From sequence record MN871447.1: a stretch of DNA of 64,000 nucleotides. One strand, 5' to 3'. The notes beneath the pieces were generated by a model. That model did not search any database and was not told the DNA's origin. It saw only the letters and a list, made by a program, of their open reading frames with translations. Numbering within the stretch: the first letter of the stretch is position 1; every line of letters begins with the position of its first letter. Both the position numbers and the translations under genes were made by a program. Of the stretch, positions 9,965 through 15,662 are shown piece by piece.

Positions 9965-10497
9965 CCCGATCCCTTCTACGTTGGAGAAATGGATCGAATA
10001 GGGTGACGCCCCCGGACATTTTTGCCGGCTCCTTGCACCTCTTTCGCCGGAATCCCCGGCTGAGGTCTATGGTCTATGGCCGCCTATTTTCGCTCTAAGG
10101 CGTAGGCCGCCGATAATGACAGGCGTCATAATTAGTACCCCTCGGCCGATTCCGCGGCGCGTTTAACCGGCGGGTCGCCGAAGTCTTTGTCTCACGAGAG
10201 TTACCAATAAGTTATTGCTTATTGGACAAATCATTCGGATACGATTCCGAACTCCCTTCCTACCGAGCCTCTACTACCGAGCAGGAGTCGAACCTGCACT
10301 CTCTGTAAACAATATCACTTGACTAGAGCAGTATTGTAAAGGTTACGTGGACTTTAAAAGTGTAGAATGGGTATCAGTTAATTTGTTGCGGCCGCATACC
10401 GGTAACTGACTTCTTCTACTAGCGCCACCACTGACTCCGGTGTCTCGCCTAGTGGCGTTGTGCGACCCATTAACTCGCACTCTCTCTTTTAAGTCCA
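9965..10497 (-). ncRNA. Large structured non-coding region with a lone T-arm
   Basis: No ORF of 60 aa or more. 12-bp helix 10348-10360/10486-10497 encloses three hairpins. T-arm GCAGG-TTCGACT-CCTGC at 10281-10297. GC-rich hairpins at 9965-10200. Confidence 0.5.
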
Positions 10498-10501
10498 ACT
10501 T

Positions 10502-10609
10502 TGGTTGATAGGTACCGAATCGAACGGCTATCTCAGGCTCCCATGTTAAGGCGCCCCTCGTATGAGAGGGGGCCTAATGCCCGCGCTTTACCTTTAAGCT
10601 AGCCTATCA
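10502..10609 (-). ncRNA. tRNA-like gene with a 40-nt anticodon loop containing a hairpin (TGG/Pro-like if trimmed)
   Basis: Acceptor TGATAGG/CCTATCA plus A-CCA; D arm; anticodon stem CGGGC/GCCTG; T loop TTCGATT. Confidence 0.7.
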
Positions 10610-10734
10610 TTGAATAGGTTCCCTAGCACTCAATGAGTATCATCTACACCAGCAGCGCCCGGTGTTTAGCCGAGATGCAATTATGCTTCAATGGGTCGTA
10701 TTTAACGGCTCATTTATTCGTCGATGATTTACGT

Positions 10735-10833
10735 AGGGATAACCAGGCGACATCCCCCTCAGCACGCCGAGGTCAACTTTTGCCTTAGGCCAAGATTAAC
10801 TCTCCGCAACATTAAGTCGCCTGGTTAACCCCT
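10735..10833 (-). ncRNA. Structured element: long helix enclosing internal hairpins
   Basis: Perfect 12-bp inverted repeat TAACCAGGCGAC (10740-10751)/GTCGCCTGGTTA (10816-10827), extended by AGGG/CCCT. Confidence 0.45.
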
Positions 10834-10862
10834 GCCTTTAGTCTAAGTAAGATGTCATTATT

Positions 10863-10952
10863 TGGCAGAGAGTGAGAGATTCGAACTCTCGGTACCCTTT
10901 CGGATACATTCCCTTAGCAGGGGAACGACTTAAACCACTCATCCAACTCTCT
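10863..10952 (-). tRNA. tRNA-Ser: tRNA-Ser(GCT)
   Basis: Full cloverleaf, long variable arm, loop CT-GCT-AA, G73, encoded CCA. Confidence 0.95.
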
Positions 10953-10961
10953 ATTAAAATG

Positions 10962-11035
10962 CGACTCTTCCAGGACTTGAACCTGGGACCTACAGCTTAA
11001 CAGGCTGCCGTTCTAACCAACTGAACTAAAGAGTC
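10962..11035 (-). tRNA. tRNA-Asn: tRNA-Asn(GTT), CCA not encoded
   Basis: GACTCTT/AAGAGTC acceptor, loop CT-GTT-AA. Confidence 0.93.
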
Positions 11036-11041
11036 ATTATT

Positions 11042-11116
11042 TGGCGGTGCTACGGAGAATCGAACTCCGGTCTCCTCCGTGACAGGGAGGTATCCTTTCC
11101 GCTAGACGATAGCACC
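11042..11116 (-). tRNA. tRNA-Asp: tRNA-Asp(GTC)
   Basis: GGTGCTA/TAGCACC acceptor, loop CT-GTC-AC, G73-CCA. Confidence 0.95.
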
Positions 11117-11124
11117 TTTTTGTT

Positions 11125-11226
11125 TGGTTGTTCCCTTCCGGATTTGAACCGGCAACCTCCTGCTAAGCAGTGGGCGGCGCAGTGGCCGCCGGTGCAGGCG
11201 CTCTACCTAGTTGAGCTACGAGAACA
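11125..11226 (-). ncRNA. tRNA-like gene with a 30-nt anticodon loop containing a GC hairpin
   Basis: Canonical D arm GCTC/GAGC; anticodon stem CCTGC/GCAGG; variable AGGTT; T loop TTCAAAT; encoded CCA; inserted GGCGGC/GCCGCC hairpin. Confidence 0.75.
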
Positions 11227-11233
11227 TTGTATC

Positions 11234-11309
11234 TGGAGCAAGCAGCGAGGTTCGAACTCGCGACCTATGACTTGGAAGGACATCGCTCTACCAACTGAGC
11301 TATGCTTGC
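11234..11309 (-). tRNA. tRNA-Gly: tRNA-Gly(TCC)
   Basis: Cloverleaf, loop CT-TCC-AA, U73-CCA, one U-U mismatch in the anticodon stem. Confidence 0.93.
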
Positions 11310-11314
11310 GCTAA

Positions 11315-11389
11315 TGGCAGAAGCGCCTAGATTCGAACTAGGGGTACCGAGATCAAAGCCCGGGGCCTTAACCGCTTGGCTACGCTTCT
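11315..11389 (-). tRNA. tRNA-Gln: tRNA-Gln(TTG)
   Basis: Cloverleaf, loop CT-TTG-AT, G73-CCA. Confidence 0.93.
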
Positions 11390-11396
11390 ATAAAAC

Positions 11397-11480
11397 TGGT
11401 GGGGAAGGGTAGATTCGAACTACCGAAGCCGAAGCAGCAGATTTACAGTCTGACCCATTTGACCACTCTGGAACTTCCCC
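11397..11480 (-). tRNA. tRNA-Tyr: tRNA-Tyr(GTA)
   Basis: Cloverleaf with long variable region, loop CT-GTA-AA, A73-CCA. Confidence 0.95.
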
Positions 11481-11641
11481 TGAATTTGGGACCCGATTAT
11501 TTCAGCGCTGCATTCTTTACTCTCGGGCCAAGGAGCACTATTAGTTTCTTCTCAGGGCGTATGGTTTCCCTCTGAGACTTGCGCAATATTTGAACAGGTT
11601 GATTGTTGTCTTAACATTCCGGAGAGAAAGTTACAATCTTT

Positions 11642-11649
11642 GTTCATAA
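11642..11649 (-). promoter_or_regulatory. Putative late promoter TTATGAAC upstream of the first tRNA block
   Basis: Recurrent intergenic 8-mer, about 160 nt upstream of tRNA-Tyr. Confidence 0.45.
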
Positions 11650-11677
11650 GATATTGAATTACTTAAATTTTGATTAC

Positions 11678-12019
11678 CTACCGGAATTTCCCTACAGATA
11701 ACCAGATATCAGCAACCAAAAGAATTTGTCCGCCATATTGGGTAACGGTATTCCAACCGTTGCGTTTAGCGGCCGCATTGATCAGCGATAAAAATTGGTC
11801 TTTCCAGTGGCCCTGGTAAATCTGAGAGTGATGTATTATCCGTGTATTATTCGAACTCTCAATCTTATTAAGTTCTTCTGTTCCCCTGATCATATCGAAA
11901 ACGTCTTTCGACTTAATCAAATAAGCCGGATCGTTAATCGTTCGATCAGAGGCTAAAGGAAGACGATAAGAAATATGATCAATGTCTTCTTGACTGTGTG
12001 CAAATGTTACGTCATTCAT
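11678..12019 (-). CDS. Hypothetical protein inside the tRNA cluster
   Basis: 113-aa ORF with AAGG RBS. Confidence 0.65.
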   Translation of the reverse strand: MNDVTFAHSQEDIDHISYRLPLASDRTINDPAYLIKSKDVFDMIRGTEELNKIESSNNTRIIHHSQIYQGHWKDQFLSLINAAAKRNGWNTVTQYGGQILLVADIWLSVGKFR

Positions 12020-12098
12020 TTTACTTTTACCTTATACAAGTTAGTGGTCTAAACCGAAATAGGAAGACCAACAAAAACTGTGGGTGAATATAATGAAG

Positions 12099-12173
12099 TG
12101 TCCTCTACTGGATTCGAACCAGTGACCTACGGCTTAGAAGGCCGTTGCTGCTATCCTGCTGAGCTAAGAGGAC
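12099..12173 (-). tRNA. tRNA-Arg: tRNA-Arg(TCT); extra C in the D stem, CCA not encoded
   Basis: GTCCTCT/AGAGGAC acceptor, loop CT-TCT-AA; D-stem 3' strand reads GCAGC rather than GAGC. Confidence 0.88.
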
Positions 12174-12178
12174 GTAGA

Positions 12179-12263
12179 TGGTGCCCGGGGCGGGGTTCGA
12201 ACCCGCACGCGATTAAGCGAGGGATTTTAAATCCCTTGTGTCTGCCGATTTCACCACCCGGGC
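12179..12263 (-). tRNA. tRNA-Leu: tRNA-Leu(TAA)
   Basis: Type II cloverleaf, loop TT-TAA-AA, A73-CCA; resembles enterobacterial leuZ (recalled). Confidence 0.95.
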
Positions 12264-12268
12264 AAATA

Positions 12269-12344
12269 TGGTGGGTCCAGCAGGTTTTGAACCTGCGACC
12301 AAGCGATTATGAGTCGCCTGCTCTAACCACTGAGCTATGGACCC
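12269..12344 (-). tRNA. tRNA-Ile2: tRNA-Ile2(CAT), or Met(CAT)
   Basis: Anticodon arm GGCGA-CTCATAA-TCGCT and D arm match enterobacterial ileX as recalled. Confidence 0.85.
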
Positions 12345-15082: not shown

Positions 15083-15110
15083 GAGAGAGGAGGGAATTCC
15101 CTCCTCTCTC
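15083..15110. terminator. Perfect palindromic hairpin closing the ncRNA region
   Basis: GAGAGAGGAGGG-AATT-CCCTCCTCTCTC, followed on the minus strand by TATG. Confidence 0.7.
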
Positions 15111-15276
15111 GAATAATTTATTTATCAAAAAGTGATCTCTTTGAAAAAGAAACTTTTGTGGTAAGAAGGGCGGAGGTAAGGATATAACCATCCCCAACAC
15201 CGCCCATAGCCATTCAGCTATAAACAGAATTTAGCGCGACCTATCTAAGAATAAGATTGGAAGTTTTATTTTATAA

Positions 15277-15371
15277 TCTAGTGCTCTACCGGCTGAGCTA
15301 TCTGCCTCCAAGAAACACTCTGTGAATGTGTCCAGGTAGGCAGAGCGGAATTCGAATCCGCGACCTCTAGA
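15277..15371 (-). ncRNA. Circularly permuted tRNA-like module B
   Basis: TCTAG-AGGTC-GCGGA(TTCGAAT)TCCGC-TCTGCCT-[30-nt linker]-AGGCAGA-TA-GCTC(AGCCGGTA)GAGC-A-CTAGA. Confidence 0.85.
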
Positions 15372-15468
15372 ATTCTTTCCGTAAAAGAAAGAAAGTTCAG
15401 TCCGCTATTTTACTGTTTACTCTTTATCTTTAAGCGTGTGAGGCGATAAGATAAAGTTAACACTAACC

Positions 15469-15589
15469 ATCCGGGTCGCATTATGGGTGCATTGATGACT
15501 GCGTCTACCAATTCCGCCATTCTCCCATAGTTTGGTGGGAGAAGAAAGAGTCGAACTTCCAGTGGGGTCATCACACCTGCAACACGGAC
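15469..15589 (-). ncRNA. Circularly permuted tRNA-like module A on a long interrupted helix
   Basis: GATGAC-CCCACT-GGAAG(TTCGACT)CTTTC-TTCTCCC-[ACCAAACTAT]-GGGAGAA-TG-GCG(GAATTGGTAGA)CGC-A-GTCATC, extended by GGTGT/GCACC, GTTGCA/TGCGAC and GTCCG/CGGAT. Confidence 0.85.
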
Positions 15590-15662
15590 TAACAATAAAG
15601 ATAAGGTTGGCCTCAATCTTTATTATCAATGGGCACTCGTGAGAATACCCATTACTAACACA

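What the first reader, a model, noticed from the sequence alone, without database searches (positions are those of the whole stretch)
11125..11226. Second tRNA-like gene with the same hairpin-in-anticodon-loop design (copy 2)
Seen: a different sequence from copy 1 but the same layout: anticodon stem CCTGC/GCAGG, 3 nt (ACC), a perfect 6-bp GC hairpin, then 9 nt (CACTGCTTA), versus 3 and 10 nt in copy 1. It sits between tRNA-Asp and tRNA-Gly with encoded CCA and an apparent 8-nt acceptor strand. Inference: two independent occurrences suggest a selected structural class rather than decay.
Basis: partly seen in the sequence, partly recalled or inferred. Interest (0 to 1): 0.7.

Follow-up and report, generated by a model that had tools for sequence, protein, structure and literature searches.

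The report
Conserved non-decoding tRNA look-alike in phage
A Klebsiella jumbo phage keeps, inside its tRNA gene cluster, a tRNA-shaped RNA gene whose anticodon loop is replaced by a 30-base loop holding a GC hairpin; it is under selection, probably cannot read codons, and most likely serves as a stable tRNA mimic of unknown partner.

Summary
Window 11125-11226 (- strand) encodes a 102-nt tRNA-like RNA between tRNA-Gly and tRNA-Asp. It has D and T arms and the anticodon stem CCUGC/GCAGG. Its 30-nt "anticodon loop" is ACC, a 6-bp GC hairpin, then CACUGCUUA. The acceptor has an extra U-1:A73 pair followed by A and an encoded CCA. Rfam scores it as tRNA (38 bits, threshold 29); ARAGORN misses it.

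The window is a 305-kb Klebsiella jumbo phage. Copy 2 and copy 1 (10502-10609) are present in all 13 related phage records, while ordinary tRNAs of the cluster come and go. Conservation stops at the gene ends, and the few changes restore or keep base pairs. It is therefore selected, not decaying.

No excision of the insert gives a normal anticodon loop, because position 37 would always be U. There is no archaeal-type splice (bulge-helix-bulge) motif, and low-depth metatranscriptome contigs keep the insert.

My best reading (confidence about 0.4) is a stable, non-decoding tRNA mimic that uses tRNA processing, a circular-permutation cousin of the two Y-RNA-like (YrlA-like) RNAs I found 4 kb away. 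The main rival is a short, unconventionally spliced tRNA intron.

The 3x9-10 geometry is not kept in the one distant homologue. No paper found describes it; one GenBank record calls it "tRNA-OTHER".

The parts
11125..11226 (-). Whole copy-2 gene (102 nt), from U-1 to the encoded CCA
   Evidence: Sequence. Rfam tRNA 38 bits at 11129-11225. Annotated 'tRNA-OTHER' over the same 102 nt in PQ182779.
11219..11226 (-). Acceptor 5' strand UGUUCUCG (positions -1 to 7)
   Evidence: Pairs with 11129-11136 as U-A, G-C, U-A, U-A, C-G, U.G, C-G, GxA. The last pair becomes G-C in phage Centimanus.
11200..11216 (-). D arm GCUC-AACUAGGUA-GAGC
   Evidence: invariant in 8 phages.
11194..11198 (-). Anticodon-stem 5' strand CCUGC
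   Evidence: Five Watson-Crick pairs with 11159-11163.
11191..11193 (-). 3-nt 5' side of the internal loop, ACC (AUC in most relatives)
   Evidence: The same C-to-U difference at 11192 appears in metatranscriptome contigs.
11173..11190 (-). Hairpin GGCGGC-CACUGC-GCCGCC. It may carry a further C:G pair closing an ACU triloop, with a bulged C.
   Evidence: The last loop base is C or U in relatives. The equivalent pair in copy 1 covaries U:A to C:G.
11164..11172 (-). 9-nt 3' side of the internal loop, CACUGCUUA. It repeats the hairpin-loop hexamer CACUGC.
   Evidence: The first base is A in phage KpXa_1.
11159..11163 (-). Anticodon-stem 3' strand GCAGG
11137..11153 (-). T arm GCCGG-UUCAAAU-CCGGA (4 bp plus a G49xA65 mismatch)
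   Evidence: In Centimanus G49xA65 becomes A-U, and the loop changes from UUCAAAU to AUCAUAC, swapping 54:58 from U:A to A:U.
11129..11136 (-). Acceptor 3' strand AGGGAACA (positions 66-73)
11125..11128 (-). Unpaired A followed by the encoded CCA end
   Evidence: ACCA is invariant in copy 2, copy 1 and L029.
10502..10609 (-). Copy 1, the paralogue (108 nt) with a 40-nt loop insert
   Evidence: Rfam tRNA 34.4 bits; conserved in 13 records; structure.

Best explanation
Copy 2 is a gene for a stable, non-decoding tRNA mimic.

Shown:
- It is a tRNA-like gene that lies in, and on the same strand as, the phage tRNA cluster.
- It has a selected cloverleaf, a T-loop/D-loop elbow, an extra U-1:A73 pair and an encoded A-CCA end.

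Inferred:
- It is co-transcribed with the cluster.
- RNase P cuts 5' of U-1, and host 3' trimming stops at the CCA, giving a long-lived RNA of about 102 nt.
- It does not enter decoding. The anticodon loop is replaced by a 3x9 internal loop plus a GC hairpin. The acceptor/T helix is 13 layers long (8/5), unlike the 12 of elongator tRNAs. No known identity set for aminoacylation is present.
- The tRNA body acts as a processing and stability scaffold and as a handle for tRNA-binding proteins. The prolonged 'anticodon arm' is the specific part.
- It works as a decoy or adaptor for a tRNA-recognising protein, such as a host tRNA-targeting defence nuclease or an RNA repair or surveillance factor.

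Topologically it is the circular permutation of the YrlA-type Y-RNA-like RNAs that the same phage encodes 4 kb upstream.
For: Real tRNA-like fold: Rfam tRNA 38 bits.

Selection:
- The gene is in 13 of 13 related records at 92-100% identity.
- The flanks vary while the gene does not.
- In Centimanus, 9 changes include G49xA65 to A-U, G7xA66 to G-C, and a 54:58 swap from U:A to A:U.
- Copy 1 shows U:A to C:G in its hairpin and G.U to G-C in its anticodon stem.
- L029 keeps all four stems with different base pairs and the same U-1:A73, G1:C72 and ACCA.
- Both copies are retained while Gly, Asp, Ser, Arg, Tyr, Gln or Met genes are missing in individual relatives.

Non-decoding:
- The three bases before the 3' stem strand are UUA, so any 7-nt loop has U36, U37, A38. 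A pyrimidine at position 37 is not found in decoding tRNAs (established knowledge).
- The window allele has C, not U, at the only candidate position 33 on the 5' side.
- The only possible anticodon, GCU (Ser), sits on a short-variable-arm body, and there is no G3:U70.
- Contigs of a wastewater metatranscriptome cover copies 1 and 2 with the insert retained, and cover the tRNA cluster but not the flanking spacer or ORF. No joint skips the insert in 4 runs.

Precedent in the same genome:
- Window 15250-15377 hits Rfam YrlA (37.6 bits, E 1e-6).
- Window 15425-15600 folds into a Y-RNA-like shape with a capped acceptor stem, T and D arms and a long terminal stem.
- M. smegmatis YrlA is cut by RNase P and receives CCA (PMC4201824, read). 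That gives the same architecture as copy 2, but in two pieces.
Against: - No partner protein is identified. No Ro60/TROVE gene is annotated in 300 kb of the relative FBKp24 or detected near the cluster.
- The insert sequence and geometry are not conserved in the distant homologue L029. This is unexpected if the hairpin were a specific binding site, unless it co-evolves with its partner.
- The RNA evidence is thin: assembled contigs at depth 3-5, and precursor-like, since they run past gene ends. A mature spliced form could be missed.
- The thermodynamic minimum for the full RNA is not the cloverleaf.
- Many other phage tRNA genes with inserts 5' of the anticodon look like real tRNAs that must be spliced. 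An unknown excision pathway in phages is therefore plausible.
Confidence: 0.4

Rival explanations
1. Copy 2 is an intron-containing tRNA gene. A 23-nt insert lying 5' of the anticodon (after position 31-33) is cut out and the halves are re-joined by phage or host RNA repair enzymes, such as RtcB or a ligase plus the phage Tpt1. The product is a working tRNA with loop CUGCUUA or AUGCUUA.
For: - G37 fits Pro.
- A family of phage tRNA genes (22 distinct inserts in 19 loci) has 45-60-nt inserts in which the last 5 nt before the 3' stem strand look like anticodon+37+38. G37 is enriched when base 36 is G (Fisher p 0.03).
- RNA 2'-phosphotransferase Tpt1, a tRNA-splicing enzyme in fungi and plants, is encoded by all 13 phages, including the window's genome.
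- RtcB is present in some relatives.
Against: - The spliced loop of copy 2 would have U at position 37, and a Ser anticodon on a class-I body that SerRS should not charge.
- There is no bulge-helix-bulge motif: the two bulges lie opposite each other rather than staggered by 4 bp (hand analysis).
- The insert is far too small for a group I intron.
- RtcB is absent from the window's own phage and from 7 other records.
- No splice joint appears in 4 RNA-type runs, while unspliced contigs do.
- The 8/5 helix with mismatches is atypical for elongator tRNAs.
Confidence: 0.2
2. Copy 2 is a cis-acting processing element. The tRNA-like fold is kept only as a cutting signal for RNase P and 3' trimming (tRNA punctuation) or as a folding spacer for the polycistronic tRNA transcript, and the RNA itself has no trans function.
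For: - It lies within a tightly packed tRNA operon, 7-8 nt from its neighbours.
- The acceptor/T/CCA features used by RNase P are the best conserved.
- The insert is free to differ in L029.
Against: - The neighbouring tRNAs supply their own RNase P sites, so an extra one is not needed.
- The insert is almost invariant among 13 phages, with 3 variable positions out of 30.
- L029 is solitary: no tRNA genes are detected elsewhere in its 14-kb locus.
Confidence: 0.12
3. Copy 2 is a decayed tRNA gene (Ala-like body) disrupted by a small palindromic insertion or duplication, drifting neutrally.
For: - ARAGORN does not call it in default mode.
- There are mismatches at 7:66 and 49:65.
- The direct repeat CACUGC...CACUGC could be a duplication scar.
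- The anticodon stem and variable region are identical to a phage tRNA-Ala(UGC) in L027.
Against: - It is universally retained and nearly invariant, while real tRNAs in the same cluster are lost.
- Sequence diverges immediately outside the gene ends.
- The changes are pair-restoring and pair-preserving.
- A distant homologue has full covariation.
Confidence: 0.08

Closest known systems
YrlA-type bacterial/phage Y RNAs (Rfam RF02553; Chen et al. 2014, PMC4201824)
   Same: Both have a tRNA-like module (acceptor, D and T arms, elbow) joined to a prolonged irregular stem in place of the anticodon arm. M. smegmatis YrlA is cut by RNase P and receives CCA. The same phage has two YrlA-like RNAs at 15250-15377 and about 15425-15600.
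   Different: - Copy 2 has the normal tRNA order, with open acceptor ends and an encoded CCA. YrlA is circularly permuted, with a capped acceptor and its termini in the stem.
- The YrlA model does not match copy 2; there is only a 22.5-bit stray hit at the gene border.
- No Ro60/Rsr gene was found.
Phage T4 stable RNAs species 1 and 2 (rnaC, rnaD)
   Same: They are small stable RNAs of unknown function encoded inside a phage tRNA cluster, with a tRNA-like T arm and acceptor or CCA end.
   Different: - The T4 RNAs are 119-139 nt and lack a recognisable D arm and anticodon stem.
- They do not score as tRNA in Rfam; the best hit is tRNA-Sec at 17.5 bits.
- They share no sequence similarity with copy 2.
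Intron-containing tRNA genes (archaeal/eukaryal BHB introns; bacterial group I introns)
   Same: Extra sequence interrupts the anticodon loop of an otherwise tRNA-like gene.
   Different: - The insert is not at position 37/38 and has no bulge-helix-bulge motif.
- It is 10 times too small for group I.
- No excision yields a canonical loop.
- Canonical examples found in the same searches look different, e.g. UUUGCA|intron|U in L196 and CUGUAG|intron|A in giant-virus tRNA-Tyr.
Engineered 'tRNA scaffold' for recombinant RNA (Ponchon & Dardel approach; cf. PMC3753655 listed)
   Same: A foreign hairpin is placed in the anticodon arm of a tRNA so that the cell processes and stabilises it like a tRNA.
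   Different: That is a laboratory design. Here the arrangement is natural, and the displayed element's target is unknown.
Bacterial tRNA-Sec and 8/4 'allo-tRNAs'
   Same: The acceptor stem is extended to 8 pairs. The acceptor/T stack is 8/5 in copy 2 (fully paired in Centimanus) and 8/4 in copy 1 and L029.
   Different: There is no long variable arm, no 6-bp D stem and no UCA anticodon. The extra pair is U-1:A73.

Membership tests
tRNA (Rfam RF00005) | Cloverleaf with conserved D/T-loop bases, scoring at or above the curated threshold | tested here: met
   38.0 bits against gathering 29, full-length model match 1-71.
tRNA (functional decoder) | 7-nt anticodon loop with U33 and a purine at 37 | tested here: not met
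   The loop is 30 nt. Every way of excising an insert leaves U36, U37, A38. The window allele has C at the 5' candidate for position 33.
tRNA (functional decoder) | 7-bp acceptor plus 5-bp T stem (12 stacked pairs) | tested here: not met
   There are 8 acceptor positions plus 5 T positions, 13 layers in all. Two are mismatched in the window and all are paired in Centimanus.
BHB-intron tRNA (archaeal/eukaryal type) | Two 3-nt bulges separated by a 4-bp helix, with splice sites in the bulges, usually at 37/38 | tested here: not met
   The unpaired stretches (3 nt and 9 nt) lie directly opposite each other at one helix junction. Hand analysis only; no dedicated BHB tool was available.
BHB-intron tRNA (archaeal/eukaryal type) | Splicing endonuclease (EndA/Sen) available in the phage or host | not tested
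   None is annotated in 300 kb of FBKp24, but most genes there are 'hypothetical'. The host genome was not examined.
Group I intron in tRNA | Self-splicing core (P3-P9), about 200 nt or more | tested here: not met
   The insert is 23-30 nt, and no Rfam intron family is hit.
YrlA / Y RNA | Match to the family model | tested here: not met
   Only a 22.5-bit hit (threshold 69) at 11200-11265, straddling the tRNA-Gly border.
YrlA / Y RNA | Permuted topology: capped acceptor stem, RNA ends in the long stem | tested here: not met
   Copy 2 has the standard tRNA order with open acceptor ends and CCA.
YrlA / Y RNA | Encoded next to a Ro60/Rsr (TROVE) gene | tested here: inconclusive
   No TROVE hit among 20 neighbouring ORFs, and none annotated in 300 kb of FBKp24. 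Divergent proteins, the last 7 kb of FBKp24 and the host copy were not excluded.
tRNA-Sec | 8/5 helices plus a long variable arm, a 6-bp D stem and a UCA anticodon | tested here: not met
   Only the 8/5 feature is present. The variable region is 5 nt and the D stem is 4 bp.
tmRNA | tRNA-like domain plus a tag-peptide reading frame | tested here: not met
   ARAGORN finds no tmRNA. A 30-nt insert cannot hold a tag ORF.

The most novel reading that the evidence does not exclude
Copies 1 and 2 belong to an undescribed maturation system in phages. In it, short inserts placed 5' of the anticodon are removed from tRNA precursors by a protein-dependent cut-and-ligate pathway that is neither BHB nor group I. 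The conserved phage Tpt1 and host or phage ligases could take part. The much larger 'hairpin + CAGCAA' insert family seen in gut-phage tRNA genes would belong to the same system. This would be the first enzymatic tRNA splicing in a bacterial system, possibly gating phage tRNA activity.
Probability: 0.12. Interest if true: 0.9.

Novelty: new variant of a known kind. Interest (0 to 1): 0.6.

Why it matters
Phage tRNA clusters are usually read only as codon-supply or anti-defence spare parts. Here a nucleus-forming Klebsiella jumbo phage group, of interest for phage therapy, keeps two tRNA-shaped RNAs that cannot decode more faithfully than it keeps several real tRNAs. Next to them it has Y-RNA-like permuted tRNA mimics.

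If these RNAs are decoys or adaptors for tRNA-binding defence or repair proteins, they add an RNA-based layer to the tRNA-centred arms race between phages and bacteria. If they are spliced, they reveal an unknown RNA-processing pathway in bacteria.

There is also a practical point: default tRNA finders miss or mislabel these genes ('tRNA-OTHER', 'tRNA-Sup-TTA').

Tried and rejected
- **BHB intron.** Rejected by hand: the bulges are opposite, not staggered by 4 bp.
- **Group I or a known ribozyme in the insert.** No Rfam family hits at gathering or E-value thresholds.
- **Isotype assignment by nearest tRNA body.** Comparison with 656 tRNAs gave mixed neighbours (His, Pro, Arg, Ala). Only the anticodon stem and variable region match a tRNA-Ala(UGC).
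- **Similarity to E. coli tRNAs.** blastn found no match.
- **Hairpin as a repeated element in the window.** It is unique.
- **More relatives.**
  - A leader-plus-D-arm pattern found only ordinary tRNAs.
  - The metagenome scan for the Ala-like stem with a 20-50-nt loop gave mostly canonical 37/38 introns; one copy-2-like gene turned up (L193/L195).
  - The scan of representative bacterial and archaeal genomes gave archaeal intron tRNAs and no Klebsiella.
  - L029 has no relative among GenBank phages.
- **MAFFT alignment of the three types.** The 3' halves misaligned, so pair tables were built from explicit coordinates instead, and the count of structure pairs and a covariance model were not used.
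- **Gene neighbourhoods of the solitary homologues L011, L029 and L062.** No RNA-processing genes.
- **The 563-aa ORF next to RtcB in FBKp24.** No Pfam, PHROG or PDB match.
- **Literature.** Six full-text searches found no description of these RNAs.
- **A script error.** The first energy evaluation used wrong hairpin indices and was corrected.

Full report
**What the window is**

The 2.1 kb around the finding is 100% identical to 'Serratia phage KpLz_1_41' (MN871447, 305 kb, isolated on Klebsiella pneumoniae). It is 90-99% identical to a dozen Klebsiella jumbo phages: FBKp24 (Maaswegvirus), KpLz-2_45 (Siatvirus), MJ359, LPKP23, Centimanus and others. The FBKp24 annotation shows a nucleus-forming jumbo phage, with a shell-protein-like gene, a tubulin and split multisubunit RNA polymerases. 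The - strand of window 10863-12344 carries nine canonical tRNA genes.

**Checking the observation**

- an 8-nt acceptor strand UGUUCUCG, then UA;
- a normal D arm, then G26;
- anticodon stem CCUGC/GCAGG;
- a 30-nt loop made of ACC, the hairpin GGCGGC-CACUGC-GCCGCC and CACUGCUUA;
- a 5-nt variable region;
- a T arm with loop UUCAAAU;
- the acceptor 3' strand AGGGAACA, an unpaired A and an encoded CCA.

ARAGORN in default mode skips it. The Rfam tRNA model matches it end to end at 38.0 bits (threshold 29) and treats the 30 nt as an insertion in the anticodon loop. The anticodon arm alone folds as described at -18.0 kcal/mol, and the hairpin sequence is unique in the window.

For the whole RNA, the nearest-neighbour minimum (-39.2 kcal/mol) pairs the 5' hairpin strand with the variable/T-stem strand. 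The cloverleaf plus hairpin scores -36.0. The G49-to-A change in Centimanus breaks that alternative helix but builds a new T-stem pair, so the comparative data favour the cloverleaf.

Copy 1 is at 10502-10609(-). It scores 34.4 bits as tRNA and has a 40-nt loop of AUU, a hairpin of about 10 bp, and UAACAUGGGA.

**Is it selected?**

Yes. Five lines of evidence agree.
- Both copies occur in all 13 related records (11 distinct phages). Copy 2 is 92-100% identical and copy 1 is 97-100% identical.
- In the copy-2 alignment, apart from Centimanus, only 2 of 102 positions vary (33 C/U, and the first base of the 9-mer C/A). The 7-8-nt spacers on either side vary at several positions.
- For copy 1, the sequence diverges completely right after the CCA in FBKp24 and Centimanus.
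- The nine changes in Centimanus copy 2 include G49xA65 to A-U and G7xA66 to G-C, giving a fully paired 8/5 acceptor/T helix. They also turn T-loop UUCAAAU into AUCAUAC, swapping the 54:58 tertiary pair from U:A to A:U. Copy 1 shows U:A to C:G at the top of its hairpin and G.U to G-C in its anticodon stem.
- Gene content around the two copies is fluid. FBKp24 lacks tRNA-Gly. Centimanus lacks Asp and Ser and has an HNH endonuclease at the position of tRNA-Met. KpLz-2_45 lacks Arg, Tyr and Gln. Both tRNA-likes are always there.

A homologue of copy 1 in an unrelated 273-kb viral contig (L029) has the same D arm, U-1:A73, G1:C72, ACCA end and AAAG trailer. Its acceptor, anticodon and T stems use different, still complementary base pairs. 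One GenBank record already labels both genes 'tRNA-OTHER'. None of the papers I could search describes them.

**Can it be a decoder, with or without splicing?**

The three bases before the 3' stem strand are UUA. Any 7-nt loop made by removing an insert therefore has U36, U37, A38. A pyrimidine at position 37 is essentially unknown in decoding tRNAs (established knowledge).

With introns allowed, ARAGORN calls copy 2 tRNA-Ser(GCU) with a 23-nt intron after position 31. The body is class I, however, and SerRS needs the long variable arm. The stem and variable region resemble tRNA-Ala(UGC), but G3:U70 is absent.

The two unpaired stretches lie opposite each other, so there is no bulge-helix-bulge motif, and the insert is far too small for group I. 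The acceptor/T stack has 13 layers, whereas copy 1 and L029 have 8/4, or 12 layers.

In a wastewater metatranscriptome, low-depth contigs cover copy 1 (10465-10603) and copy 2 (11106-11217) with the inserts intact. They cover the tRNA cluster but give zero depth over the adjacent spacers and ORF. None of four runs shows a joint that skips the insert. This evidence is weak: the contigs are assembled, the depth is 3-5, and the pieces look like precursors.

**Evidence that keeps the splicing idea alive**

Pattern scans of IMG/VR found many phage tRNA genes with inserts in the anticodon loop.
- One family (22 distinct inserts in 19 loci, often several genes per contig) has 7-12 nt, then a 6-8-bp hairpin, then a conserved CAGCAA-like motif, then 10-20 nt.
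- In that family the last five bases before the 3' stem strand look like anticodon+37+38. G37 goes with base 36 = G (Fisher p 0.03).
- These look like real tRNAs that must lose an insert lying 5' of the anticodon. No Rfam family explains the insert.
- Copy 1 fits this layout in miniature (AU...UGG-G-A, i.e. Pro with G37). Copy 2 does not.

On the protein side, all 13 phages encode the RNA 2'-phosphotransferase Tpt1/KptA (Pfam 145 bits; the gene is at MN871447 91266-91826). RtcB (402 bits) is found only in FBKp24, KpSz_1, KpZh_1 and KpZh_LPS_45, not in the window's phage.

**Context that points to tRNA mimicry**

About 4 kb upstream, a separate unit ends in a strong terminator-like hairpin at 15083-15110. 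It holds two permuted tRNA-like RNAs.
- Window 15250-15377(-) matches Rfam YrlA at 37.6 bits (E 1e-6 in a 611-nt search, below the curated 69). The order is T arm, acceptor 3' strand, a 31-nt cap, acceptor 5' strand, D arm. FBKp24 annotates part of it as 'tRNA-Sup-TTA'.
- Window 15425-15600(-) folds on its own into a Y-RNA-like shape. A long irregular stem is formed by the two ends, and it carries a T arm, an 8-bp capped acceptor stem and a Leu-type D arm.
- Chen et al. warn that tandem tRNAs can mimic YrlA hits (PMC4201824). Here, however, the two acceptor strands flanking each cap are exactly complementary (6 and 7-8 bp), which tandem unrelated tRNAs would not show.

Copy 2 is the circular permutation of this design: its acceptor is open with CCA, and its long arm is closed by a loop. 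M. smegmatis YrlA is cut by RNase P and receives CCA in vivo, which gives the same architecture in two pieces. No Ro60/TROVE gene was found near the cluster or in 300 kb of the FBKp24 annotation, so membership of the Ro/Y system is not established.

**Verdict**

Copy 2 is a real, selected tRNA-like gene. I think it most likely (about 0.4) yields a stable non-decoding tRNA mimic. In this reading the tRNA body gives RNase P and CCA-end processing, stability and a handle for tRNA-binding proteins, and the prolonged anticodon arm is the specific part; the partner is unknown.

The rivals are an unconventional short intron (about 0.2), a purely cis-acting processing element (about 0.12) and a decaying pseudogene (about 0.08). 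The remainder is unassigned.

It does not hold for the exact 3x9-10 geometry, which L029 does not share.

Noticed in passing
window 15250-15377 (-): Circularly permuted tRNA-like RNA that matches Rfam YrlA (Y RNA-like) at 37.6 bits, E 1e-6 locally and below the curated 69. The order is T arm, UCUGCC, a 31-nt cap, GGCAGA, D arm. The FBKp24 record labels its first half 'tRNA-OTHER / tRNA-Sup-TTA'.
   Followed up: partly
window 15425-15600 (-), with terminator-like hairpin at 15083-15110 (-): Second permuted tRNA-like RNA with a Leu-type D arm. The acceptor 3' strand plus ACCA sits 6 nt upstream of its complementary 5' strand. The minimum-energy fold is a Y-RNA-like long terminal stem plus a tRNA-like junction. 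It lies just downstream of a promoter annotated in FBKp24. No Ro60/TROVE gene was found.
   Followed up: partly
window 15110-15330 (-): Downstream of the YrlA-like hit, the sequence continues with another tRNA-like 5' half (GGAGGCAGA-UA-GCUC...GAGC) followed by an expanded AU-rich 'anticodon' region and a degenerate T-arm-like hairpin. It was not resolved.
   Followed up: no
window 10502-10609 (-): Copy 1, the paralogue. It has 8/4 acceptor/T helices, a 40-nt loop insert and a hairpin with two bulged C and a CAU triloop whose closing pair covaries (U:A to C:G). If an insert were removed, the loop AUUGGGA would read as Pro(UGG) with G37.
   Followed up: yes
window 10610-10862 (-): A 250-nt non-coding stretch between tRNA-Ser and copy 1 contains an 11-bp inverted repeat (AACCAGGCGAC/GUCGCCUGGUU). 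The fold z-score is only -1.7, there is no Rfam hit, and metatranscriptome depth is zero over most of it.
   Followed up: partly
IMG/VR loci L092, L097, L099, L110, L112, L127, L142, L143, L148, L157, L158, L167, L176 and others; also L229 (Lachnospiraceae MAG): An undescribed family of 45-60-nt inserts in phage tRNA genes, often several genes per contig. The layout is a short leader, a 6-8-bp hairpin, a conserved CAGCAA-like motif and a spacer, then what looks like anticodon+37+38 just before the 3' stem strand. There is no Rfam match and no BHB motif. They look like introns lying 5' of the anticodon.
   Followed up: partly
IMG/VR loci L008-L061 (e.g. L014:6692-6803 +): About 40 contigs of 30-58 kb share a 112-nt tRNA-like gene. 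It has an 8-bp acceptor stem, no CCA, and a 46-nt prolonged anticodon arm ending in a GAAA-capped hairpin. It is another non-decoding tRNA look-alike family.
   Followed up: no
L193/L195 (viral contig, 9.5 kb), L011:6987-7096, L062:2122-2227: Solitary tRNA-like genes with the same CCUGC/GCAGG stem (L193, L011) or a 9-bp acceptor (L062), and GC-rich hairpin inserts that start after a 2-3-nt 5' bulge. L011 sits between DUF669 and Gp157 replication genes of a siphovirus-like contig.
   Followed up: partly
FBKp24 (MW394391) 173261-176199 and 191106-191669; MN871447 91266-91826: Tpt1/KptA RNA 2'-phosphotransferase is encoded by all 13 phages of the group. RtcB ligase is found in only 5 records, not in the window's phage. 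A 563-aa ORF next to RtcB has no Pfam, PHROG or PDB match.
   Followed up: partly
window 10863-12344 versus L001-L007: The canonical tRNA set differs between close relatives (Gly, Asp, Ser, Arg, Tyr, Gln or Met missing in one or another), and HNH homing-endonuclease genes sit inside the cluster in KpLz-2_45 and Centimanus. A 113-aa ORF (11678-12019) inside the cluster has only weak PHROG hits of unknown function.
   Followed up: partly
L023:1848-1919 and L188:3505-3577: Two further genes share the copy-1-type D arm (GCUUAAAGGUAAAGC): an amber-suppressor-like tRNA (anticodon CUA) and a tRNA-like gene with a 6-nt anticodon loop.
   Followed up: no
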